Part shown: positions 2,721 to 59,340 of the stretch, one piece after another
How positions within the stretch are numbered: position 1 is the first letter of the stretch
Layout: each line of letters starts with the position of its first letter
Assembly (NCBI RefSeq): GCF_006345805.1
Contig: NC_043011.1
Coordinates: 64,616,464 to 64,680,463, forward strand
Length of the DNA stretch: 64,000 nt
Source: Octopus sinensis
Lineage: Eukaryota
Direction: 5' to 3'
The notes under the pieces: model-generated
The model's database searches: none
Told to the model about the DNA's origin: nothing
The model's input: the letters and a program-made list of their open reading frames with translations, nothing else
Program-made: the position numbers and the translations under genes

Positions 2721-4179
2721 GGTCTCTGAAAATTTGGTACACCGGAAAAGAAGCATTCAGCTTCCTGTATCCAGGAGCATGTCTATTCATCCAAATATAT
2801 ATAACGATCGTATATATAAACAAATTTCGGACCGTGTAGATGATGATTTTGATAATGGAACACTTATACTACTTCTCTTTACAAGTCTACAAAATAGTCT
2901 GTCTAGATAAGATCTGTATAATAAGATGCAGTTTATTCATGTCCACATTGGCGCATTCATTAAATCTAGTCAGCACCTGGAAGCGAACTAGTAGTGACCC
3001 ACCAGGTTTGTGAGGATTTTGGTCCCCCCCCTCTACTTTCGTATTTACAGTGAACCACAATAAAAGGAAATTGCAAGTGACATAGATTATTTTGGTAGGG
3101 GAAATGAAACACCCACACGTAATTTTAGCAAGCGAAGTACATTATTTGACTGAATTCTTTCAGTGATTAACTAGCTCAGAAATGTGGCTGGCATTTCAAA
3201 AGTTTACTTAAAAATTACCAGCAGGTTTCGGAATTTAATCTTGTTCCAAACATATTATTCAGTCGCCTCTTGTAGACTTTAGACGGAATAAAAATATAAG
3301 AGAAGTATTAACCTCTATTTCTGACTACGCGAAAACTAACATTGGAGTGTCTGTATGCTGTACACTAAAAAATTGACACAAGAGAAGACAGCCCTGCTCA
3401 TTGTGGAGCAATATGTGATTAGTCGATTCCGTCAGGAAACATAGCAGAAATGTTACGATTTGAATGGTGCGTGGAACCTGTAAAATATCACATTTAGAGT
3501 ACTCAGAAGAATGCATAATACAAAACCTGCGTCCTATTGGTTGAGCAATAGAACAATTAAACTAAACATTTAATTGGGAAGATATGAGAGGCCAAATACG
3601 ATAACAGTAGTACAATATTTTGGATCAAACGGGGGTAATTTTGAAGGAGAATTGTAAGTGCATATTCTCAGAAAATATTCTTAATCTGCTATACATTTAG
3701 TCCTCAAAATGCAGGAAGAGAAATATATTTATGGGATATTAACACGACGCCCTGGAGACATGAATAAAATGACAGTAGAATTTCCTCATATTTAAAAAAC
3801 AAAACAAATTATTTGTTTGCGTAATCTTTCTCTTCGTGTTGTTATTTCTTTTCGTTTTTGTCTCTTTCGGTGTTTTTCTTTTTGCTTTTTTAAAACTTTA
3901 AACTTTGAAGACTGATTATTTCATTGTATCAACGTGGAAACGCTGGTTGCTTCGTTCAAATTTTGGTTACGAATTCCTATAATTTTGAATTTCTTTTTGT
4001 CACTCTTCATTTGGAACTCGACAAGGAGTGTCTATTGTTCAACCAATAAAACCTCTGATACAGTCGCATCATGACCATCGTATTCTCTACTTCCGTTTTT
4101 ATGATGAGTTATGACAAATCATTTAAAATATATTGATGATATCGATGGCGATGAAAATAATAATATTTATAAAAATAAC

Positions 4180-22910: not shown

Positions 22911-23010
22911 GTTATGACGCAGCAGATTACTGTTATGAGGCAGCGAAAAAAGATTGTTATTATGCTATGCACAGATTTCCTGTAAGACGCCCGGATCGTC
23001 ACTATTGCGA
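22911..23010 (+). CDS. Paralog 1, coding exon B (G-YDAADYCYEAAKKDCYYAMHRFPVRRPDRHYC; phase 1 to 2)
   Basis: Acceptor ttcttcgatttcaAG and donor CGA|GTAACT. Open frame with C-x7-C-x16-C that aligns with the exon at 56663 (YCYE..KK.CY..M). Confidence 0.8.
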
Positions 23011-29542: not shown

Positions 29543-29631
29543 TCGATTAAAAGCTTTCATGATTTGTTACGCTAGGAAAAATACTGCGTGTGCCTCAGCG
29601 ATCAGACAAATGGCATACAGACGTCTCTGTG
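29543..29631 (+). CDS. Paralog 1, coding exon C (D-RLKAFMICYARKNTACASAIRQMAYRRLC; phase 2 to 1)
   Basis: Acceptor ctttttttcttttAG and donor TGTG|GTATGA. 89 nt long, with identical length and Cys spacing to the exon at 58255. Confidence 0.82.
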
Positions 29632-31134
29632 GTATGACATTTTAATTACTTACAATAAAATTTCGAGAAATGTTGTATAAGATGGAATCTCATGCAGTAA
29701 CAATTATTGCACTGAGAACGGATTCCAGATTATAGTGACTGTAAATATTACCTGAAATTAAATACGTATTTAAGAATTCATACGCAGTTAGCCATTTGAA
29801 CAATCACGGCAACTGAACTTATTATCACATTTTTATAAAGTAGTTTCCATTAAGCGATACCTGTTTGCTCAGTCGTTTCCATAATGAAACAAATATATTC
29901 TTAACTTTCAAATTTATCAAATATGAAGGAATGAAGTAGAGAGAGAACACGGAAAATTATGTAACAAATTGTCGCATTAGGTATTTGAAATTTAATGAGG
30001 CATTGCTTGGAAAGCCATTCTTCAGCTAATAATCGGAAACTAACGGAACCCCAAACTTTCTATTAAATCTAGAGTATATGTTTAATATGAGACACAATCC
30101 GCCTCTCGGTATATGGATATTGCGTAGTGGTGGGAAGTGACGGAATACCGCGTCAGCTGATACTCGTGTATTTCAAGTAAGGAATTTATAAATTTTATAG
30201 CTATATAATTGTTGGGTTTTTTTGTCAGTTATTTAATTTTCATGTTGAAAACGAAGAAATTTCAAGAGCACTCCACGCAATACATAATCCAAAAAACCTA
30301 TCTAGAATTAAGTAATATCAGTGAAATATTGCATCGATCTCATTCTAATTGTGTTATATTAAGACTCTGACACCGACTTCCAGACACATCATGAAGACTG
30401 CAATATCAGACGAATAATAGAATATATCTACTTACAGTGCTTCTTTATGTATGTTTGTGTTTCTAAGTAATATATATAGTTGAAATTTACAGAAAAACGA
30501 AAGGCGAAGAGGGGTGTATAAACAGGAAGCGGTTGTATTAGTTTGATGCTAGGGAAGGTCATGACAGTCAGTCTTGTGTGTGAGTGTCTGTGCGTGAGTG
30601 TTACTAGGCGATAGGCAGCAGAAAAGCTACCAAACACCTGCATTCTTAAAGCTACGTATTCCTCACACAAACATTTCCTCGCCATATTAAATGTAAATTA
30701 TTAGCATGTTCACTGCGCGTGCGCGTGTGTGGTGATTGTGTTTGTGTGTATGTATGCAAATATCTATGTATTTACTTCAGCATACATTTAACATCCGTGA
30801 ATGACAGCTGTATTAGCATTACTATCCCAAATCAGCTCCCCATTTATCGCTTACACTACGCTATCCACCACTTCCATGGTATCAACTACACTCACTATGC
30901 CACCACATTTATCCTAATACTAACACTCATGCACACATCCTCTTTTCTCAAAAAACATCCTTTACCCGCTTGGAAGCCCATTAAATATTTGAAAGTACAA
31001 TCAGTCTATATTTGAAATGGATGTTAGATTATCAAATATTCACAGTTTTGTTGCATAGCCTTATTTGTGTAGACAGCAGGGCGGTAACATACTGATCACA
31101 AATGAAAAAATTACCATTTATAAGTATATATATA

Positions 31135-46319: not shown

Positions 46320-49300
46320 AGATTCCGGTGAGAAATCAGAAGATTCAGGTGAGAAACCTGCCCGGGAAGTAAACACAAGTGCAAGTGCTCCTACCAGCAC
46401 CAAAAGCCAAATCCAAAATCATGGAGATGAAGGAGCCAAAAATGAAATAAAAGGAGGAAAACTAAAAGAAGATCAAAAGATGAAACAGCCAAAGAATGAA
46501 AAACTAAATCACAAACAAAACCAAAAGATGAAACAGCCATGTATAGAAGCAAATCTGACTATCCATATACCGAAAAGGATAGAAACAGACAGCGCACACG
46601 TGTTGTGTAACTTCTACTTGAAATGTGTCTGGTGGCATGGAGAGGAAGGTGTAGGCTGCCGTTTTGCACATCAAAGACCCTGCCACATAAACACGAAACA
46701 GGGCAGAAACCAATTACCAAAAGGAAAACGAATGGACCACGCACCACCTGCCCCAAAACGGAGGTATCCAGATATAATGCGTGCTACAAACCGACAAAAT
46801 GTTATTGAAAGGGCAGCTGCTGAACAAGAATCTTTTTTGTGCATGGCACAAAAGATTGTACAGCATCTAACCTGGCTCCAAAAAAATCAAACTCGCCGAT
46901 GGGACTATCCACAATACACAAGACCGCCACGGCAAATAGAATCAAGGTGGACACCGCCGGCAACAGAATACACCTCACCTCAATGTTCCTACTGAACATC
47001 AGAGGACTGCTAGCACACAGTAAAAGGACAAAAATCCCGTTCTTTAGAGACTTTGTGGCATGCAATCAAGCCTTAAACATAGCATGTACGGAAACACACC
47101 TGAAACCGGATATACCACGGTATGTGGTACTACGGACATACAGAAAAGAAAGGAGTCATGGAGGAGTTGCTATGTACATCCATGAGGACCTCACACCTCA
47201 AGTCTTTTGTCATACACAAATTCGGTGTAAGACACACTAATTCTACATATAAGGCAACTTGGTGTAGTTCTGTGTGCTACATATCGCCCTCCAGATGCCC
47301 CAAGCCATGTAGGCAAGTTTGAAGATTGCCTTATAAAAATAGAAGTTCTAGTCACATTAGAACAACACATAAGTGTACTTCTTATGGGAGACTTCAACCT
47401 ACCCAATGTCAGATGGCCCGAGGGCCTTTCTCTCTCAGGAATAACACGATGTGAACAAGGACAGGCGAGGTCCCTCCTGAACCTCATCAACACTCTGTAC
47501 ATGGAGCAAGTAATATTCCAACCAACCAGGGCAGGTAACATATTGGATCTCTGCTTCACAAATAATATGGATATTAACCATAATGTGAAAGTGACACCGA
47601 CACTACTCTCGGAACACATCATGGCAGAGCTGATCATGTACGGGCCAAAGGAAAGCATGGAAATGTAGCCTACAAGAAACTCTCAGAACCTTTCCAGCTT
47701 GAACTTCCATAAGTAAATTGGAAACAAATTGAGAAAGAGATCCTCAAACAAAACTGGCTTGAATGTTTATCCTCGCTAGAGATCGACATGAAACTTCAAT
47801 AATTCATGTATGTAATGCAAGCCATATGCTACAAATGTGTCCCAGAGAGAAAGGCCACTTTACACAAGAGCAAAATCCCAAGAGAGAGGAAAATTCTAAT
47901 GAGACGGCGTAGAAAAGTTTCAAATCGCCTAAACAAACTCTTGGAAATTGAAAATGTTTGCAACTCTCCCATGAAAAAGAAAGAGCAGACAAAGAAGCCT
48001 GGGCTATAGACAACATACAATCTAACCCCAAGCTTTCTACAGGTATGCCAAAGAAACAGCTACGGTGCACTGTAGGATAGGGCCACTCCTTGAAAATGAT
48101 GGCACACTCACAGGAAATCCAGTGAGGTTAAGTGAAATACTAAATGAGCAATTCAAGACTATTTTCCCTCAACCCCTAGGGCATTTTCAATCAGCAATCC
48201 AACTGACTTCTTTACCACTGCAGATATAAAATCAGAGGCAGCAATGATTGATTGCATCAATATAAAGGAAGACGATGTAATAAAGGCTATAGATGAAATG
48301 AAAACAACTCAGCTACTGGCCCCGATGGATTCCCAGCAATTCTTCTAAAAGTATGTAAGAGAGTCCTAGCAAGACCACTGCACTTCCTCTTTCAGAGCTT
48401 CCTTGCAGTTGGCAAACTTCCAAGAAAACTGAAGGAAGGTAAAATATGCCCTATTCGTAAAGGAGGTAGCAGAGCGGAGGCCAAGAACTACAGACCTATC
48501 TCTCTGACCTCACACATCAGCAAGGTTATGGAACGAATAGTCAGAAGGAAACTAATCACCTTCCTTGAAGGAAATGACTTGCTGCCTGACACCCAACATG
48601 GTTTTCGGCCAGGAAGAAGCTGCTTAACTCAGCTCCCACAACACTTTGACTGGGTGCTGAAACGACTGCTCAACCGCTCAAATGTGGAAGTCATATATCT
48701 CGACTTTGCAAATGCCTTTGATAAAGTCGATCATGGAATGATATGCCACAAACTGCGTGATCTTGGCATAGTAGAAAATTTGGGAGAGTGGCTTCATGAC
48801 TTTCTGAAGGATAGAAGTCAGGTGGTAGTAGCCAATGGGGCCACTTCCATTAACACGCAAATAGTGAGCGGTGTTCCGCAAGGCACTGTTCTGTGACCAC
48901 TACTGTTCATAATGGCCCTCTCAGACAGGCCCTCAACCACGCAGAGAGTCACGATCACAAGTTATGCAGATGATACAAGAGGCACAATCAGTGCTAGATC
49001 TGGGTATTTAAATGAGGGATGATGCAACCTTTCATGTGCATGCTGCTAATTTGGCAATGAAATGTAGGCGGCTGACCGGATGGATTCTTAGAATCTTTAG
49101 AACAAGAGATCAGGAAACCATGATGTTCCTTTGGAGGACACTTATCCTAAGCCACTTTGACTATTGCTCTCAGCTATGGTCACTATCCAGTGTCAAGTTA
49201 TTCACAGAACTGGAGGCGATCCAACGAAGCCACTCGAAGAAGATAGCCGCTGCGTAGCATATAAGCTACTGGGAAAGACTCAAGAAATTAAGACTCTATT

Positions 49301-49770
49301 CCTTAGAGCGTAGGCGAGACAGATATGCCATAATATACATCTGTAAGATCCTAGAAGGACTTGTCCCAAACTTTGGCATCGAGATTTACACAAATGCCAG
49401 AACTAGGCGCCACTGCATAGTGCCAAGGACTCCAAATTTGCCATCAAGATGTAGGACAAGATACTGTGATAGCCTGGGCTTCCGAGGCCCACAGCTCTTC
49501 AATATCCTCTCGAAGAACCTAAGAGAACTGCATGGTGTGGATGCAGATGTCTTTAAAATGAAACTGGATCTCTTCTTGTCAGGTGTCCCTGATGAACCAA
49601 CTTCACGGCAGGAGCTGCAGATGATGGCATCTGCATCGAACTCTCTCATGCACAAGATGGCAATTGCTAAAAAGCATTCATGAAGTAAAATCATGTAGCA
49701 ACACCTAATGGCGCTGCCGCAGCACGGCCACAGCTTGTGAGCTGAATCTAAATAAATAAATAAATAACAA
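46320..49770 (+). mobile_element. Decayed near full-length CR1-clade LINE (Cys/His ORF1 remnant, APE endonuclease, RT), (TAAA)n tail
   Basis: LNIRGL, TETHL, GGVA, MGDFNLP, NYRPISLTS, QHGFR.GRSCLTQL, YLDFA.AFDKVDH, SGVPQGTVL and ADDT. Confidence 0.9.
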
Positions 49771-50111
49771 AATAAAAACATTATTTCACATTCAGTTAAG
49801 CATGAAAATGATTAAATTGTATCTAACGTGAATGCGTCTATCGATTGAATATATCAATAAGATTTTATAAGGCAATTAACAATAAAATCTAATTGCTTAT
49901 TCATTCAATTAGGTTCAGTTATTTTGTGATCGCATTGCAAATCCAGGAAAGAAGTTGGAATGAACTAAAGTAATGTCATGAAAATTAATGTAATATATAC
50001 TGACAGTACTTTATTTGTTAATCTGGCAAAGTTCTCGAAAAACCAATAAATGCATGCAGTAAAATTAGAAAACGAACTCAACACCATACTTTCTCTCTCT
50101 CTCTCTACTAG

Positions 50112-50206
50112 CTGATGAGCATGCTAAACAGCATGCTGCTTCTTCGCCCCATCTCGAGACATCACATATCCTAAAATTGGTTCTAATTACATCGGAGTTG
50201 ATTTGA
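50112..50206 (+). pseudogene. Paralog 2, terminal exon D (A-DEHAKQHAASSPHLETSHILKLVLITSELI*)
   Basis: Strong (CT)n-actAG acceptor. 95 nt, the same length as 58858-58952, with AKQ.A..S..L and a hydrophobic tail conserved. Confidence 0.78.
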
Positions 50207-52990: not shown

Positions 52991-54431
52991 TGTGCGTGCG
53001 TGCGTGCAATTGTTTACGGGACTTTGTGTGTTTTCTCATAATACGTACAGGATTTTCTAATTTGCAGAGAAGGGAACACTTACTGGAGATTTGGTGACCG
53101 AGGAGCAATCCCTCGTGGCAGAATATGAGTAGTAATTTCTTTGATCCCACTGAATCTGTCAAATTTTCCCCGCTATTTCTAGCTTAATAAAATGATATAC
53201 TTTGCCAGAAAAAAATATAACAATATGTCTCGTGAGGAAGAAGTAGTAGTTTAAATATATTTTATAGGTTATGAAAATTACATAAATATAATACATGAAT
53301 TTGTCACGTAATAAAATGGAAAAGTCACTTATGTTCGGTGACTAATAACTCCCTGCCACTGTCACGGCTTTTCTACAAATACAGTATACAGAATATATCT
53401 TCATTCATTTCTTCATCGAGTGAATGTTTCACTTCTTAACTACATTGTTATTTTATGTAAGTAGATATAATTTCGTCACGTTCTTTGAACACTTACTGCA
53501 CTAACACATGCAAACACAAAGATATATGCTCTCACATACACAAACCCATATACCCATGCACACTTATATACATATAGGCACACATGTATGTATACACAAA
53601 TATCTCGTTTTGGCAACTAACTCGCCTTCGATTTGCTGTTCTTTTCCTGTGCCTTTCTCTTTGTTTCTTCTATTGGAAACATTACACACTCATATATGTT
53701 CATATGAGCATTTTCTTATATTCTTACAACATACGTTCAATCTTTCAGGGATCTCTATAGGTACTCATGCGTGCATAACTTATTTCTGATCACTATATTG
53801 AATTCATGTAATATTATTTCCATCATCTGTTCTTCTTCATGTACAAAAATAAACATGGTTGTAAGTCATAGAATTGACAAAGTGTAGTTTTCTTAACTCT
53901 TGAACTCTACTTCTCGTTGCACCAGCTGCTGTTTAATCTTCCGTTGTCTTCCCTATAATTAAGAAATATTACAGTCTTCTAAAATATTACTGGTAGCCTT
54001 AAATTATTATTCAATGAGATATTTATTTAGTCCCGTTTAAGCAAAATTTATACTGTGGTAGAAGTTTGCCCCTAAGAATTCCTCTGTATGTCTTTCACAT
54101 ACTTCATCTGGCATATTTCATTGATGTGTATTATTTCAGCCGAGTGAGTAACATTCCCTGTTCCGGACCAGTGAGTTGAAGAGCGAAACATCGCAGCAAA
54201 GCATCTACTTACCTATCTGCAGACACAAAATTACCTCAGGAATCCTGCGACAAGCGTTCCTGGAAGGTATTCAAAACTTTGGCAATCTGCGATAAATATT
54301 TGGCACTAAATCCCGTGTAACATACTGCTGAATATACTCATACATCTGTGTTTCGAACCAACACAAGTGACCAACAACACGGGGCAAATAAATCATATTA
54401 GTTCTACTGGCTTGACGCAAGATTTTATACA

Positions 54432-54600
54432 GAAAATATTTTAGATTATTTACATTGTTTACAATTGACGGATATTTGCCCACTTCTTGTTTGTTGTTAG
54501 GAGAATGTTTCGGCTGATATACCACCCAGCCTTCGTCTTGGGGAAATTTCGAACCTGGGCTTTGATTCCTAAGGTATTTTTCGATGTTGTTGTTGCTGTG

Positions 54601-54636
<36 letters not shown>

Positions 54637-54824
54637 ATCATGATTATTATTATTCAGGTCACTGCCAGGAATTGAACTTCGAATCTTGGTGTTAGAAGCA
54701 CACGCTCTTAACCACTACGCCATATGCCAAATAGCATATGACGTTGTGGTTCAAAGCGCGGGCTACTAGCACCAAGGTTCCGAGTTCGATTTCAGGCAGG
54801 GACCTGAATAATAATAATCATGAT

Positions 54825-54871
<47 letters not shown>

Positions 54872-55160
54872 GAAGAAGAAGAAGAAGAAGAAGAATAAAA
54901 GAAGAAGAAAAAGAAAAAAAAAAGAAGAAGAAGAAGAAGAAGAAGAACAACAACAACAACAACAACATCGAAAAATACATTAGGAATGAGAACCCAGGTT
55001 CGAAATTTCCCCAAGACACCTGATGAAGGCTGGGTGGTATATCAGCCGAAACATAGTGCTAACAACAAGCAAGAAGTGGACAAATATCCGTCAATTGTAA
55101 ACAATGTAATTAACGTACATAATTCCTCATCTCTTAAATATAGAACAGGAAAATATTTTG
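54432..55160. mobile_element. Head-to-head pair of tRNA-head / (AAT)n / hammerhead-tail elements (SINE-like, Penelope-type tail)
   Basis: Diverged inverted arms centred on catatgc-caaata-gcatatg (54721-54740). Left arm on the minus strand has A box TGGCGTAGTGG (54712-22) and B box GTTCAATTC (54669-77). Both arms continue through (AAT)n into the same ~160-nt tail. Confidence 0.8.
55015..55060 (+). ncRNA. Minimal type I hammerhead ribozyme motif (family P1)
   Basis: gacac-CTGATGA-A-ggctg/ggtggtatat/cagcc-GAAA-c-ATA-gtgct. Stem II is a perfect 5 bp. Stem I has one mismatch and the stem III ACGT has decayed to ACAT. Confidence 0.75.
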
Positions 55161-55700
55161 CTACTAAACAATTGAGGAATGAGTGGGCGAACACGCAGTG
55201 ATGAGAGCAGAATAGAAATTGTAGAAAGTCAGAATGGACATTTAGGAATAAGCGATTAGAATGCTCGCACTCATAATGGAGGGAAAATTCCAGAAAGTAA
55301 CAACACCATACAATTGTAACAATAATATTATATACATAAACTCATAACAATTTGAAGTTCACAACAACAATTGCAACAAGATTAGAAATTATAATACACA
55401 ATGCTACAGGTTTTGATCTCATTCCTCTCCTCAAAGATTCCAAACACGGCACTCCCAATTCAAATTAAAATCATATTTAGAATATTGGAAGTTTTCAATG
55501 TATTTTTCTATGTAAGATTTTCCATATTAGAAATATTTTATAAAAATGCATTTGAATAGTGTACCTGAATATTTGTTTCAAAATTTAAGACAATAGTAAT
55601 AAAATGTGTTTGTATTCAATTCAAAGGAGTCACGCCATTAAGAATTTCGAACGACTCTAGGATATTTCAATTGGAAGTGAGAATGACTCGTGTAACAACG

Positions 55701-55734
55701 ATGAAATATTGTTTATGTATTCTTCTCTTTGTTC
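55701..55734 (+). CDS. Paralog 3, coding exon A (MKYCLCILLFV, signal peptide)
   Basis: AACG-ATG, hydrophobic codons and donor TTC|GTAAGT; phase 1. The homologous upstream acceptor position reads AA rather than AG. Confidence 0.82.
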
Positions 55735-56662
55735 GTAAGTAACGTGAAATGTCATTCATAAATTATTTTATGCACAATATATGATTCCGTTCTCTTCTTT
55801 CTCTCCATATAAGTGTGTAATTATATATAATTATAAATATATATGTGTTTGTATGTGTTATTGTGTGTGGGAGTATGTCTGTGCATGTATATGTGTGTGT
55901 GTGTATGTGTGTATTTGTGTGGTTGGGCGAGTGTGTATATTTGTATATCACAAATACTATCGTCATCTCCGCCTAAGCGAAGACGGAGTTGTCTTGGCGG
56001 GATTTGCGCTCTCTAAGTGCTTTTGTTCATATTTTAATGAATAATCTGGGAAGAGAAGTTATAAAAGTTGTCATTTATTTCTTCTTTTTCTTTTGTAGAT
56101 CATAAACTTTTCGGTCTCTCTTTGCTAGTTTTTTTTTTTGTATAATGAAAAAATGCAATTTTCAAACTAATATTGTGGCACTAAAAAAATTGCAAATTCA
56201 ACCCAAAACGAACTTTAAATAGAATCATCCTTCAAAGTTATAACCCTAGGCGAATGTATGGCTATGTTTTCAAAAAACTTCCTCTTCATTAACATGGTGG
56301 AAGATTGGGAAACACTACGTCGTATCGTGGTTCAGTTCCCTCTATTACATCAAGAGACCGATGAATAAAATTGGAGATAGTGGAAAATGAAACAAACCTA
56401 TTTTACACATATGTATCTGTGTGCCTTTCCCATAGTACAGATTCAGCGACCAGCTTACATATTGTCTGCTGGTTCATTGGAAGCACCATAATTTAGTGTT
56501 TCTGAAATATAGATACATCACATGAGTGCCATGTAGGAATGTATTTGTTGTGCTATACCCACAAAGCCAATACCAAAGTAACGACGATTCTCCAATGAGT
56601 GAAATAAATACAACGATAAAAAATATGTCCATAGAATAAATTATAACATCTTTAATTTACAG

Positions 56663-56777
56663 ATGTTGCAGTATCAGAATTAAGTGAATATTGCTACGAA
56701 TTGGGAAAGAAATATTGCTATAATGGTATGAGATGGTATCCTATACCAACTCATAAAAACGACACATACTATTGCAA
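56663..56777 (+). CDS. Paralog 3, coding exon B (H-VAVSELSEYCYELGKKYCYNGMRWYPIPTHKNDTYYC)
   Basis: Acceptor ctttaatttacAG and donor CAA|GTATGT. Phase 1 to 2, C-x7-C-x18-C, with an N-D-T sequon. Confidence 0.82.
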
Positions 56778-58254
56778 GTATGTTCGATTCTTTATAAAGA
56801 AAATTTTCACATTTTTAAAAATTGAATTTATAAATATATATATTTATCATGATCGAAAAATGCATTGTAAATAAACAACGAGGGATAAAGGACGTATGCT
56901 ATACTGAGCGTAAAACCAATGGGAGAGAGAAAATTAAGGTCCCTAATTCATCATCAGTTATGAACCAAAACACAGCGAAGTATTCACTCTTATCGTTAAT
57001 GTAGCGAAACTGAGAATTAACGCTTTGGTTGGTAACTGATGACGAATTAGGGGCGCTCTGTTCGTATCCTCCGTCCGGATGTACACTCAGTATAAGTATA
57101 TGTTACTATGCGTCATTTATTTGCAATGCGTTTTTCCATCTATTTAATGACGATGCGCAAAGAAATAACGAGTTTTATTAGAAGTAAGATTATATATATA
57201 TTCATATCTACCTGTTATTTATGTATTTAAGGCAAGGAGCTGGGTGAATCTTTAGCACACTTGGCAAAAAAGCTCATCATTTCGTCCGTCTTCACAATCG
57301 TAGAGCACATTCTGTCGACTGCGACTTTGTCTTTTATCTTCTCTGGGTCAAAATAATAATTACCACCTGAACACTGATGTGGATGTAATCAACTCTCAAT
57401 CAACATATTCCAAACTATTTAATGATCCATTCAATCTTAGATCCACTTTTAGCGATAATTTGTTTACAGAGTTTTAGTCCAGACTGTTGAAACCAAAAGA
57501 AGCCAGGCAAGGATTTTGTTTACGACAACAAATTTTCACCTCACCTGTATTCGAATACAGCAATTAGCGGGTAGGAACATTTAACCAGATTAAAAATTAC
57601 AGACCTGCAAATTCTTCTGTAAACATATCGATGTAATATAAATAATAGCTTAATGTATTGGCTCAAGGTCAGGAATTCCTATGCTACCAAATCTCACCGA
57701 TTACATTGACGACGGGACATGAACTGAAAGAGCAGATATCATGTTGATCTTCACATCCTTGAACCTCTGAAAGTAGAAAGCCAGACGAAATATTACTATG
57801 CAAATATTTCCAAAGCTCGAATAATCCTACAAGTACATCACCATTAGATAAATATGACAAATATTTCCTCTTACTTGAGGCACGACGCCTAAAGCTGGGG
57901 GGGGGGGCTAATGGATTATATCGACTGAGTGTTCAAATGATAATATACAGTTTAACTCAGGACGAAAAGGCTGCTGAGCATTTTGTCCAGCGTGCAAACA
58001 ATTGTACCAGCACGTGACCTTCAATTTGAAGTTATTGAATTAAAACCATGGGATTGAATAAATAATCCGTAAGTAAACCATGCACAATGATACCAACTAT
58101 ATTAGAATATGTCATATCAAATGTATGACTTCGATATCGTGTTATTAAAAGTAAATAACTGCTATTTTACATTAGATACGTTAAACAATATGCATAGAAT
58201 ATTATTCCATGGCATATATTATAATTTTATTGCCAAATTTATTTTTGCTCTTAG

Positions 58255-58343
58255 TCGAATAAATATGTTCCATAGCTGTTTTAAAGGAAAGTTCGGGGAG
58301 TGTACTAACTTATTCGACAACATATATAACAAGGAAAAATGTG
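58255..58343 (+). CDS. Paralog 3, coding exon C (N-RINMFHSCFKGKFGECTNLFDNIYNKEKC)
   Basis: Acceptor atttttgctcttAG and donor TGTG|GTAAGA. Phase 2 to 1; contained in track ORF 58109-58429. Confidence 0.85.
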
Positions 58344-58857
58344 GTAAGAGATTTTCATTACATATTATAGTATTACAAGAAATAATGTTTCAAAGGATCA
58401 AATACATACAATCGTTATTTTGCACTTAATTTTATTACCTAATATTCCCGTGAACAACTATTTTTATTGAATGGAACTACTATCGGCAATAAAATGGGGT
58501 TTTTTAATGTTATACTTATCAGTTAATAATTCTCGTTCCCTTAAGCATAATTATAATCACTGTCTATATTGCTAGAATGTATGAATATTGTATGTGATTG
58601 TAGGTATTTATAATGTTATGAGCAATAAAATATAAATTTGTTAAATTGAATCAATGGTTAAATAGTAACTTTTGTTAATTTGCAAATCCATAGTAGTTGA
58701 GAATGTACCCAATTGAGGACAGGAAACTTAAAATAATAAATACTTACATTTCTTTCTTTTTACATGACGGTTTTATTAGCAGTTGTTGGAAAGCCCATAA
58801 ATATAAACCAAAAAATAAAACAAAGTAACTGTGCACCGTATTTTCTGTTTATTCTAG

Positions 58858-58952
58858 GTGATGTAATGGCTAAACAGAATGCTCCTCCTTCCTTCCGCCT
58901 TCAGTCAACATGGCTCCTATCGTTGTTTCTAATAATATCGGTATTGCTGTGA
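58858..58952 (+). CDS. Paralog 3, terminal exon D (G-DVMAKQNAPPSFRLQSTWLLSLFLIISVLL*), GPI-signal-like tail
   Basis: Acceptor tttctgtttattctAG. In frame with exons A-C (34+115+89+95 = 333 nt, 110 aa plus stop). Polar spacer followed by 13 terminal hydrophobic residues. Confidence 0.82.
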
Positions 58953-59340
58953 TGGAATGACGCCCCAGCTTATGCTTATGTATTTCGCGTAAGAATATTC
59001 ACAAATAAAAACTGATTTCAAATTCTGTATAGTTTGTTGCTTGTACATCGTAACAATTACTTAAATTGCAGTTGAAATGTGGAGGAATCTGAGAAACACA
59101 TGTACTAAATTATCCTTCAATAACTGTACACAAAAATTATAATTTCAGAGTAATATTGATGTAACGGCATACTATCAGAATGATATTTATATAACCGGCA
59201 CGGACATTTAGTCCGAAACACAGGCTAAATTAACAATTAAGTAATATTCTGACGTACGTCTAAGAATTAAAACTATATTTATAAGGATTCACCATGATGC
59301 ATCGCTAGCCATTACATATTCTATATTTTCTCTCCTTGTT

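What the first reader, a model, noticed from the sequence alone, without database searches (positions are those of the whole stretch)
55701..58952. Paralog 3 is a complete 110-aa precursor with a GPI-anchor-like C-terminus
The joined CDS (333 nt) reads MKYCLCILLFVHVAVS-ELSEYCYELGKKYCYNGMRWYPIPTHKNDTYYCNRINMFHSCFKGKFGECTNLFDNIYNKEKCG-DVMAKQNAPPSFRLQSTWLLSLFLIISVLL. It has a signal peptide, a ~65-aa three-disulfide domain with one NDT sequon, a polar spacer and a 13-residue hydrophobic end that is short for a transmembrane helix. Caveats: the best omega site (N-A-P) has a disfavoured Pro at omega+2, and the acceptor upstream of the ATG exon is AA, so the 5' UTR structure differs from paralogs 1 and 2.
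Basis: partly seen in the sequence, partly recalled or inferred. Interest (0 to 1): 0.75.

Follow-up and report, generated by a model that had tools for sequence, protein, structure and literature searches.

The report
Intact small octopus surface-protein gene copy
This is a real, intact four-exon copy of a fast-evolving octopus gene family for tiny six-cysteine proteins that probably sit on the cell surface by a lipid anchor, but no RNA from this copy was found and the family had already been met elsewhere in this genome, so it is an ordinary new member.

Summary
Exons 55701-55734, 56663-56777, 58255-58343 and 58858-52 (all GT..AG) join to 333 nt and give exactly the 110 residues quoted.

It is not chance. 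At least eight copies lie on the same strand within about 350 kb of contig C15. They share all six cysteines, the intron phases and the C-terminal motif KQxAPPS..RL plus a 12-15-residue hydrophobic end. An exon-B profile retrieved only octopus proteins, all listed as "uncharacterized".

Of the three copies in the window, only this one keeps the full architecture. Copy 1 has no hydrophobic end. Copy 2 is decayed and carries a LINE insertion.

Corrections and limits:
- An in-frame ATG at 55683 could make the precursor 116 aa.
- The NDT sequon sits in an insertion unique to this copy.
- The GPI reading fits in geometry, and multi-domain relatives have canonical omega sites. Here the omega triplet is N-A-P, and no GPI predictor was available.
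- The site that is CAG in four paralogs is CAA here, next to a 15-nt deletion.
- No RNA contig covered any exon in four runs.

Neuritin and RGM_N likeness stayed below every threshold. The scan has found this family before on other DNA of this genome (six notes).

The parts
55701..55734 (+). Exon A. The ATG plus 11 codons and 1 nt encode MKYCLCILLFV, the first part of the signal peptide. The donor is GTAAGT.
   Evidence: The exon and its flanks are 73-80% identical in nucleotides to paralogs p2, e and g.
55683..55685 (+). Upstream in-frame ATG. It would add MTRVTT and make a 116-aa precursor. It has A at -3, as does the 55701 ATG.
   Evidence: in-frame upstream codons; alignment A3. Paralogs e and g have the same ATG. 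The O. bimaculoides protein P0005 is annotated as starting MSMTRVTTMKY.
55668..55674 (+). CAATTGG, the site that reads CAG|TTGG in paralogs p1, p2, e and g. The AG is lost here (AA at 55669-55670), and 15 nt of the AT/T-rich tract just upstream are missing.
   Evidence: alignment A3. Reading it as a 3' splice site is inferred from isoform X1 of LOC128249852 (P0014..MQALIM|LEMSM..) and from three mRNA accessions that encode the same P0003 protein.
55659..55660 (+). An AG found only in this copy (ctctAG|GATATTT, where paralogs read CTCTAATATATTT). It is a possible substitute acceptor behind a weak pyrimidine tract.
   Evidence: Sequence only; its use is untested.
56663..56777 (+). Exon B. It covers the end of the signal peptide (HVAVS), Cys1-Cys3 and the N44-D-T sequon, and ends ..YYC AA|gt (phase 2).
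   Evidence: C10, Y11, C18, M22, P26, D33, Y36 and C37 are invariant in seven paralogs.
58255..58343 (+). Exon C. It covers Cys4-Cys6 (spacing C-x7-C-x12-C) and ends ..KC G|gt (phase 1).
   Evidence: All three Cys are invariant in seven paralogs.
58858..58952 (+). Exon D. It covers the polar spacer DVMAKQNAPPSFRLQST, the 13-residue hydrophobic end and the TGA stop. The candidate omega site is N87.
   Evidence: The motif KQ[NSDK]A[PA]PS..RL[EQ] plus a hydrophobic end is kept in e, g, h, P0003 and P0005.
59004..59009 (+). AATAAA polyadenylation signal, 52 nt after the stop.
   Evidence: Sequence only.

Best explanation
This is an intact protein-coding member of an octopus tandem gene family for small cell-surface proteins. 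The family is listed in public databases only as 'uncharacterized'.

Inferred mechanism:
- The 110-aa precursor (116 aa if translation starts at 55683) enters the ER through an N-terminal signal peptide, cut after A-V-S16.
- Residues 17-80 fold into a small helical domain pinned by three disulfides.
- N44 may be glycosylated in this copy only.
- The last 23 residues or so act as a GPI-attachment signal, with cleavage at about N87. That would leave a domain of about 71 residues tethered to the outer membrane leaflet.
- There it would act as a ligand or co-receptor, in the manner of other small GPI-anchored cysteine proteins such as neuritin.

What is shown and what is inferred: the exon structure, family membership, retention of all family-invariant residues and the architecture are shown. 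Signal cleavage, the disulfides, GPI attachment and function are inferred.

The copy has been kept by selection for most of its history. In the public RNA data reachable here it is not detectably transcribed, and it has lost a conserved element just upstream of its ATG exon. It is therefore either expressed in a narrow tissue or stage from a changed 5' end, or it was silenced only recently.
For: Gene model: four exons in frame with canonical GT..AG sites and AATAAA 52 nt after the stop.

Family:
- Exon-B and exon-C translations hit paralogs on the same strand of C15 between 64.42 and 64.77 Mb.
- The paralogs share the same phases and boundaries and have six invariant Cys.
- An exon-B profile found 13 proteins among 1.84 billion, all from Octopus, with E values down to 2e-15.

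Architecture:
- The A-x-S|E cleavage motif and the spacer plus 12-15-aa hydrophobic end are conserved.
- Multi-domain relatives end with canonical omega triplets N-S-A, D-N-S and S-A-S before similar tails.
- The AlphaFold model of the closest annotated relative, P0003, is all-helical, with pLDDT about 80-86 in the domain.

Maintenance by selection:
- Copy 2 next door shows what decay looks like. Its exon B is gone, Cys6 is lost, there are charged residues in the tail, and LINE ORFs lie at 46291-49680.
- In a substitution-only drift simulation, an intact ORF with six Cys and 12 splice nucleotides survived with probability 0.07 at 0.05 changes per site and 0.006 at 0.1.
- Synonymous divergence from the nearest paralogs is about 0.6-0.7.
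Against: - No RNA holder was found in the run index.
- Depth was zero on all four exons in four presumed RNA contig sets. Contigs show presence, not absence.
- The conserved CAG upstream of the ATG exon is CAA here, with a 15-nt deletion.
- The omega triplet N-A-P has Pro at omega+2. No triplet in the tail has a small omega+2 residue.
- Paralog g has Lys at the equivalent omega position.
- dN/dS against paralogs is 0.5-0.9 on only 30-55 synonymous sites, so it gives no constraint signal specific to this copy.
- No protein matching this copy or its O. sinensis neighbours is in the searched protein collection.
Confidence: 0.55

Rival explanations
1. It is a recently silenced copy, that is a young unprocessed pseudogene. 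The reading frame is still whole. The gene can no longer be transcribed or spliced properly, because the conserved element 28 nt upstream of the ATG exon (CAG to CAA, plus a 15-nt deletion) was destroyed.
For: - A3 shows the change is unique to this copy among five aligned paralogs.
- There is no RNA holder and zero exon depth in four runs.
- No matching protein is in the databases searched.
- Decay is common in this cluster: copy 2 is broken and copy 1 lacks the hydrophobic tail.
- The drift simulation allows an intact ORF if silencing is younger than about 0.05 changes per site.
Against: - Every family-invariant residue, all eight splice dinucleotides, the stop and the AATAAA are intact.
- An AG unique to this copy, 10 nt upstream (55659-55660), could replace the lost one.
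- The role of the conserved CAG (acceptor or core-promoter element) is not shown.
- The RNA data were assembled contigs of unknown tissue, which drop rare transcripts.
Confidence: 0.3
2. The gene is real but the product is not GPI-anchored. The hydrophobic end would then be a short membrane anchor with no cytoplasmic tail, or be trimmed so that a soluble secreted protein is released.
For: - No candidate omega site in this copy has a small residue at omega+2.
- The conserved A-P-P-S motif puts Pro at omega+2 or omega+1 in most single-domain members. Paralog g has K-A-P.
- Copy 1 ends without a hydrophobic tail..MRHNPPLGIWILRSGGK*, so an untethered form may exist in the family.
Against: - A hydrophobic stretch of 13-15 residues at the very C-terminus is too short to span a bilayer. 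With an 8-residue spacer and a polar linker, it has the standard geometry of a GPI signal (established knowledge of GPI signals).
- Paralog h has S-A-A. Multi-domain relatives have N-S-A, D-N-S and S-A-S.
Confidence: 0.25
3. It is a chance arrangement of short open frames, with no gene there.
For: None beyond the lack of RNA.
Against: Eight or more paralogs share the same exon phases, invariant cysteines and C-terminal motif. Annotated orthologous family members exist in O. bimaculoides and O. vulgaris.
Confidence: 0.01

Closest known systems
Octopus 'uncharacterized protein' family: O. bimaculoides LOC128249851, LOC128249852 and LOC128249853 (XP_052830350 to XP_052830355). Multi-domain relatives are LOC128249887 and O. 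vulgaris CAI9735829, CAI9735840 and CAI9735841.
   Same: It has the same six-Cys spacing, the same conserved CY..C..M..YP..D..YC / R..F..C.......C............CG motifs, the same signal-peptide cleavage motif and the same KQxAPPS..RL plus hydrophobic end. Its neighbours g and h are the orthologues of P0005 and P0003.
   Different: This copy has no close orthologue among the proteins retrieved. Its best score is about 45% of its self-score. It has a 2-residue insertion that creates NDT, and it has lost the conserved CAG upstream of the ATG exon.
Neuritin / CPG15 (NRN1, Pfam PF15056)
   Same: It has the same overall design: a precursor of about 110-140 aa with a signal peptide, one small six-Cys domain and a C-terminal GPI-type signal. 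A protein-language-model search put neuritin clusters first among named families for the two closest annotated relatives (scores 0.84, and 0.83/0.83/0.82). From my own recollection of human neuritin, the C-x8-C-x7-C spacing and an FHSC motif also match. That is a lead, not a test.
   Different: The NRN1 model gave no hit at E<=10 on the exon translations, on the cluster in a six-frame genome search or on eight family proteins. The language-model scores are below the 0.9 level and share only 142-147 features. The loop between Cys5 and Cys6 is much shorter here.
RGM N-terminal domain (Pfam PF06535), the BMP-binding helical head of repulsive guidance molecules
   Same: Cys3-Cys4-Cys5 (C-x8-C-x7-C) align in register with the octopus RGM N-terminal domain. 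The RGM_N model gives weak matches to model positions of about 10-49 in several relatives. The four-domain protein P0001 reaches 37.9 bits against a cut-off of 24.2.
   Different: Single-domain relatives score only 9.5-12 bits. This copy's exons score nothing. The cluster is not hit in the genome search, although the true RGM gene on C2 is. hhalign gives E 0.29 and 0.086. There is no RGM body, meaning no von Willebrand D-like part.
Ly6/uPAR three-finger proteins (for example CD59), the commonest small GPI-anchored cysteine proteins
   Same: Size, signal peptide and GPI-type tail.
   Different: Those proteins are beta-sheet 'three-finger' folds with 8-10 cysteines. This family has six cysteines and is predicted all-helical.
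GDNF/GAS1-type cysteine-rich helical domains (GFR-alpha, GAS1)
   Same: They are helical, disulfide-rich and often GPI-anchored. UniRef names the two-domain relative P0011 'GDNF/GAS1 domain-containing protein'.
   Different: No Pfam GDNF-family match at E<=10 for P0011 or any other relative. The cysteine count per domain differs.

Membership tests
Octopus six-Cys helical mini-protein family (uncharacterized LOC128249851-3 type) | Six cysteines spaced C-x8-C-x16/18-C-x8-C-x7-C-x12-C, with conserved CY, M, YP, D and YC | tested here: met
   Alignments A1 and A2. All invariant columns are kept by this copy.
Octopus six-Cys helical mini-protein family (uncharacterized LOC128249851-3 type) | The same four coding exons with the same phases: a split inside the signal peptide, after the YC of Cys3, and after Cys6 | tested here: met
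   Boundaries ag|AT....YC AA/GA|gt, ag|TCG.. and ..C G|gt are seen in copies a, e, f, g, h and p1.
Octopus six-Cys helical mini-protein family (uncharacterized LOC128249851-3 type) | Significant sequence match to annotated members | tested here: met
   An exon-B profile that included this copy retrieved P0003, P0005, P0009 and others at E 2e-15 to 3e-05. Exon-wise local scores against them are 78-97 for exon B and 70-84 for exon C. The joined protein was not searched.
Neuritin (Pfam PF15056 NRN1) | Match to the NRN1 model at or above its 27-bit cut-off | tested here: not met
   No hit at E<=10 for exons B, C and D. No hit on the C15 cluster in the six-frame genome search. No hit for eight family proteins.
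Neuritin (Pfam PF15056 NRN1) | Architecture: signal peptide, a single six-Cys domain and a GPI signal in about 110-140 aa | tested here: met
   This is a resemblance in design, not proof of descent.
Neuritin (Pfam PF15056 NRN1) | Shared intron positions with vertebrate NRN1 | not tested
No NRN1 gene structure was available from the tools.
RGM N-terminal domain (Pfam PF06535) | Match to the RGM_N model at or above its 24.2-bit cut-off | tested here: not met
   This copy's exons gave no hit and the cluster gave no hit. Single-domain relatives scored 9.5-12 bits. Only the four-domain P0001 passes, by adding four weak stretches.
RGM N-terminal domain (Pfam PF06535) | Profile-to-sequence similarity to the octopus's own RGM N-terminal domain | tested here: inconclusive
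   hhalign gave E 0.29 and E 0.086 with Cys3-5 in register.
GPI-anchored proteins (attachment signal) | N-terminal signal peptide | tested here: inconclusive
   Rule-of-thumb reading only: K2, a 12-residue hydrophobic core and A-x-S at -3/-1, conserved in relatives. SignalP was not available.
GPI-anchored proteins (attachment signal) | Hydrophobic stretch of about 12-20 residues at the extreme C-terminus, preceded by a polar spacer of 6-10 residues | tested here: met
   The 13-residue hydrophobic end lies within a 15-residue uncharged run. The spacer PSFRLQST is 8 residues, and 23 residues would be removed after N87.
GPI-anchored proteins (attachment signal) | Small residues at omega and omega+2 | tested here: not met
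   The best triplet is N-A-P, and no candidate has G, A or S at omega+2. Paralog h (S-A-A) and multi-domain relatives (N-S-A, D-N-S, S-A-S) do meet this feature.
GPI-anchored proteins (attachment signal) | Release by PI-PLC, or a GPI remnant on the mature C-terminus | not testable with these tools
   Needs an experiment.
Ly6/uPAR three-finger family | 8-10 cysteines in a beta-sheet three-finger fold | tested here: not met
   Six cysteines. The relative's model is all-helical.

The most novel reading that the evidence does not exclude
The family would be a cephalopod expansion of an ancient neuritin/RGM-head-type helical six-cysteine module. It would be used both as single-domain lipid-anchored proteins in tandem clusters and as chains of up to eight modules. 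It would be diversifying quickly (dN/dS 0.3-1.7 between copies) as part of the octopus cell-surface recognition or neural signalling repertoire. This copy would be an expressed member with a rewired 5' end and a new glycosylation site.
Probability: 0.2. Interest if true: 0.55.

Novelty: new member of a known kind. Interest (0 to 1): 0.3.

Why it matters
The copy by itself adds little. It is one more apparently unannotated member of a family that already appears in public databases as "uncharacterized" and has been met six times in this scan.

It is useful for three reasons:
- It is a clean reference copy. In this window, an intact member sits next to a tail-less one and a decayed one.
- It shows that such short-exon genes are missing from the protein sets searched for this genome.
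- The family as a whole is an untested candidate for lineage-specific surface signalling in octopus. It is small, helical, disulfide-locked, probably lipid-anchored, tandemly expanded and fast-evolving.

If the distant link to neuritin or the RGM head were proven, it would extend those vertebrate-centred modules to molluscs.

Tried and rejected
- **Pfam on exon translations:** nothing at E<=10.
- **Six-frame genome search with NRN1 and RGM_N:** the cluster was not hit.
- **PDB sequence search with the family profile:** only chance-level rows, E>=0.24, and no RGM.
- **Foldseek against PDB with the P0003 model:** nothing at E<=0.001.
- **VIA-align wide search:** best Z 4.7, generic helical arrangements only.
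- **hhalign against the octopus RGM head:** not significant.
- **RNA:** the run index found no RNA holder, and four contig sets gave zero depth on the exons.
- **Upstream exon:** I looked for the exon implied by isoform X1 (MQALIM) near the cluster and genome-wide. It was not found on C15, so the 'acceptor' reading of the conserved CAG stays an inference. A TATA/initiator reading of the same element was considered and cannot be excluded.
- **dN/dS against paralogs:** too few synonymous sites, and partly saturated.
- **Word-index protein searches with P0005 and with A5:** they returned only the three O. bimaculoides proteins. One search missed even P0003, so absence there is weak evidence.
- **Papers:** nothing on the LOC or accession names, and nothing for neuritin plus octopus.
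No octopus genomic or cDNA context from other species could be fetched, and no orthologue test was possible.
- **Joined model not searched:**, the joined 110-aa model was never sent to a search, family scan, cluster look-up or fold. Those were done exon by exon by reference, or on database relatives. The join was made only inside scripts, to check the translation and to compute tail properties and the drift simulation.
- **SignalP, NetGPI and PredGPI** are not among the tools.
- **Chance ORF, Ly6/uPAR and GDNF/GAS1 membership:** rejected for the reasons given under Membership tests.
Full report
**The observation.** The window is AT-rich animal DNA. It is G000 contig C15, 64616464-64680463, and earlier notes of this scan label the genome as octopus, Octopus sinensis. 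Read directly and by script, the flagged stretch holds four exons on the + strand:
- 55701-55734
- 56663-56777
- 58255-58343
- 58858-58952

Each is bounded by good GT..AG sites (donors GTAAGT, GTATGT and GTAAGA; T-rich tracts before each acceptor). Cysteines outside the leader are at 22, 30, 49, 58, 66 and 79. The only sequon is N44-D-T. The last 13 residues are hydrophobic, within an uncharged run of 15. AATAAA follows the stop by 52 nt. No long ORF or transposon frame overlaps the gene on either strand.

**Not chance: a tandem family.**
- The exon-B and exon-C translations, searched by reference against the whole genome, hit further places on the same strand of C15 between 64.42 and 64.77 Mb.
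- After fetching those stretches, I found the exon B and exon C pair in copies a, e, f, g, h and in window copy 1. All have the same boundaries and phases. Matching first exons turned up in e, g and copy 1, and last exons in e, g and h.
- All six cysteines are invariant, as are Tyr, Met, Pro, Asp and Tyr at fixed places (A1 and A2).
- A profile of exon B against 1.84 billion representative proteins found 13 proteins, all from Octopus. The single-domain ones are O. bimaculoides LOC128249851/2/3 (106-123 aa). The others carry two to eight modules.
- Paralogs g and h are the orthologues of P0005 and P0003. The flagged copy has no close orthologue among them.
- No protein matching this copy or its O. 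sinensis neighbours appeared in two word-index searches. That index is not very sensitive.

**Why 'complete' is a fair title.**
- Copy 2 (42.5-50.2 kb) has a leader disrupted by Arg, Gly and His. It has no recognisable exon B, no Cys6, charged residues in its tail, and LINE reverse-transcriptase frames at 46291-49680.
- Copy 1 has exons A-C, but its last exon ends ..MRHNPPLGIWILRSGGK*, with no hydrophobic end.
- The flagged copy keeps every family-invariant residue, all splice dinucleotides, the stop and a poly(A) signal.
- In a substitution-only drift simulation, such a gene stayed intact with probability 0.07 after 0.05 changes per site and 0.006 after 0.1. Synonymous divergence from the nearest paralogs is about 0.6-0.7. 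So the copy was kept by selection for most of its existence.
- dN/dS between paralogs is high and noisy: 0.3-1.7 overall, and 0.50, 0.62 and 0.91 for this copy against g, h and e. It rests on 30-55 synonymous sites. The family evolves fast outside its cysteines, and this test says nothing specific about this copy.

**The two ends of the protein.**
- *N-terminus.* It has Lys2, a 12-residue hydrophobic core and A-V-S before Glu17. Relatives keep A-x-S|E. This fits a cleaved signal peptide by the (-3,-1) rule, but no predictor was available.
- *Possible earlier start.* An in-frame ATG lies at 55683, with A at -3. It is homologous to the start region of the annotated P0005 (MSMTRVTTMKY..). If the mRNA reaches that far, the precursor is 116 aa (MTRVTT + 110).
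- *C-terminus.* With omega at N87 the geometry is that of a GPI signal: a polar linker, an 8-residue spacer, a 13-15-residue hydrophobic end and no cytoplasmic tail.
- *Conservation of the tail.* The block KQ[N/S/D/K]-A-[P/A]-P-S..RL[E/Q] plus the hydrophobic end is conserved in e, g, h, P0003 and P0005.
No alternative triplet in this copy is better, and g has Lys at the omega position.
- *Support from relatives.* Paralog h has S-A-A. The multi-domain relatives end with N-S-A, D-N-S and S-A-S before similar tails.
- *Odds.* I put GPI anchoring at a little over one half. The rivals are a short membrane anchor or a secreted form.
- *Sequon.* The NDT sequon lies in a two-residue insertion unique to this copy, so glycosylation there is not a family feature.

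**The 5' caveat.**
- Aligning 220 nt around the first exon of five paralogs (A3) shows a conserved block ..TAATATATTT..(AT-rich)..ACAG|TTGGAA.TGAG.ATGACTCG.GTAACAACG ATG.
- In this copy the AG is AA (55669-55670) and 15 nt just upstream are missing. A new AG is present 10 nt further up (55659-55660).
- Two indirect facts favour reading the CAG as a 3' splice site. Isoform X1 of LOC128249852 begins MQALIM and then LEMSM.., and the LE matches TTG GAA right after the CAG. And LOC128249853 has three mRNA accessions for one protein, which suggests alternative 5' untranslated exons.
A contiguous reading in O. bimaculoides, or a core-promoter role for the block, therefore cannot be excluded.
- Either way, this copy alone has lost a conserved element at its 5' end.

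**RNA.**
- The run index found three DNA holders under three organism labels, with 0.97, 0.91 and 0.46 of the sampled words. It found no RNA holder.
- A full mRNA would hold roughly a tenth of the words of the 3.5-kb query, which is above the index's one-twentieth floor.
- I laid four presumed RNA contig sets on 53400-59300. Depth was zero in every bin that holds an exon. Signal came only from repeats, at 54385-55172, 56749-57142 and 57931-58127.
- These are assembled contigs of unknown tissue, so this is absence of support, not proof of silence.

**What the domain is like.**
- AlphaFold2 on P0003, the closest annotated relative, used an alignment that included this copy's exon B and C pieces. 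It gave an all-helical model with mean pLDDT 71.8, about 80-86 across the domain.
- Neither Foldseek nor the wide VIA-align search found a distinctive solved relative. The best Z was 4.7, from generic helical arrangements.
- The PDB sequence search was also blank.
- *Neuritin.* The NRN1 model never matched. Only the protein-language-model search put neuritin first among named clusters for P0005 and P0003, at 0.82-0.84 with 142-147 shared features, which is below the level that counts.
- *RGM head.* Single-domain members score 9.5-12 bits. The four-module P0001 passes the cut-off only by summing four paralogous stretches. hhalign to the octopus's own RGM head gives E 0.29 and 0.086, although Cys3-5 fall in register.
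- My conclusion is that the protein works like a neuritin-type small anchored ligand in design, but membership of NRN1 or RGM_N is not shown.
- Six earlier notes of this scan describe the same family on other DNA of this genome, with the same mixed verdict on neuritin.

- The joined 110-aa sequence was not sent to any search, family scan, cluster look-up or structure job. It was built only inside scripts, for the translation check, tail statistics and drift simulation.

**Verdict.** This is an intact but so far untranscribed-looking and unannotated member of a known, uncharacterized octopus family. The GPI anchor is plausible but unproven, and the precursor may be 116 rather than 110 residues. 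Interest is modest.

Noticed in passing
window 54435-55124: A palindromic (foldback) element of about 690 nt lies about 580 nt upstream of the gene. Its arms are 54435-54537 and 55022-55124 (88% complementary), with nested arms around a TTA/GAA microsatellite core. Its sequence is extremely abundant in all four RNA contig sets, with summed depth up to about 99,000 at 54976-55172. That suggests a highly repeated, transcribed element family. It has no Rfam match.
   Followed up: partly
window 42573-50203: Copy 2 of the family is a decayed pseudogene. The leader is MKYCRGILHIV, exon B is not recognisable, exon C lacks the last Cys, and the tail has charged residues. Long LINE-type frames (endonuclease/reverse-transcriptase-like, 46291-49680) sit between exons C and D.
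   Followed up: partly
window 22913-23008, 29544-29633, ~30075-30140: Copy 1 keeps exons A-C with all six Cys, but its last exon ends ..MRHNPPLGIWILRSGGK* with no hydrophobic end. It is either a naturally untethered (secreted) variant or a copy on its way to decay.
   Followed up: partly
L018, about 4018-4131 on the minus strand (G000:C15 ~64697517-64697630): A first-exon-like stretch, 79% identical over 115 nt to this gene's exon A region, lies in inverted orientation about 17 kb beyond the window's end. It hints at a further, oppositely oriented family member.
   Followed up: no
protein P0007 (540 aa) and P0001, P0004, P0011, P0008: The same six-Cys module occurs as chains of two to eight tandem modules in other octopus proteins. 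Several end in canonical GPI-type tails (N-S-A, D-N-S, S-A-S). UniRef calls one of them 'GDNF/GAS1 domain-containing', which Pfam did not reproduce here.
   Followed up: partly
window 55842-55921: An imperfect (TG)n / TATGTGTGTG microsatellite lies in intron 1.
   Followed up: no
window 56749-57142 and 57931-58127 (intron 2): RNA contigs at low to moderate depth map only to these two intronic patches and not to the exons. They are most likely dispersed repeats transcribed elsewhere.
   Followed up: no
L025 (G000:C8:81754627-81754785, -) and L026 (G000:C12619:81297-81446, +): These are the best matches in the genome to the neuritin model. They score only 19.6 bits, below the cut-off. They may be members of other clusters of the wider family noted earlier in the scan.
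   Followed up: no
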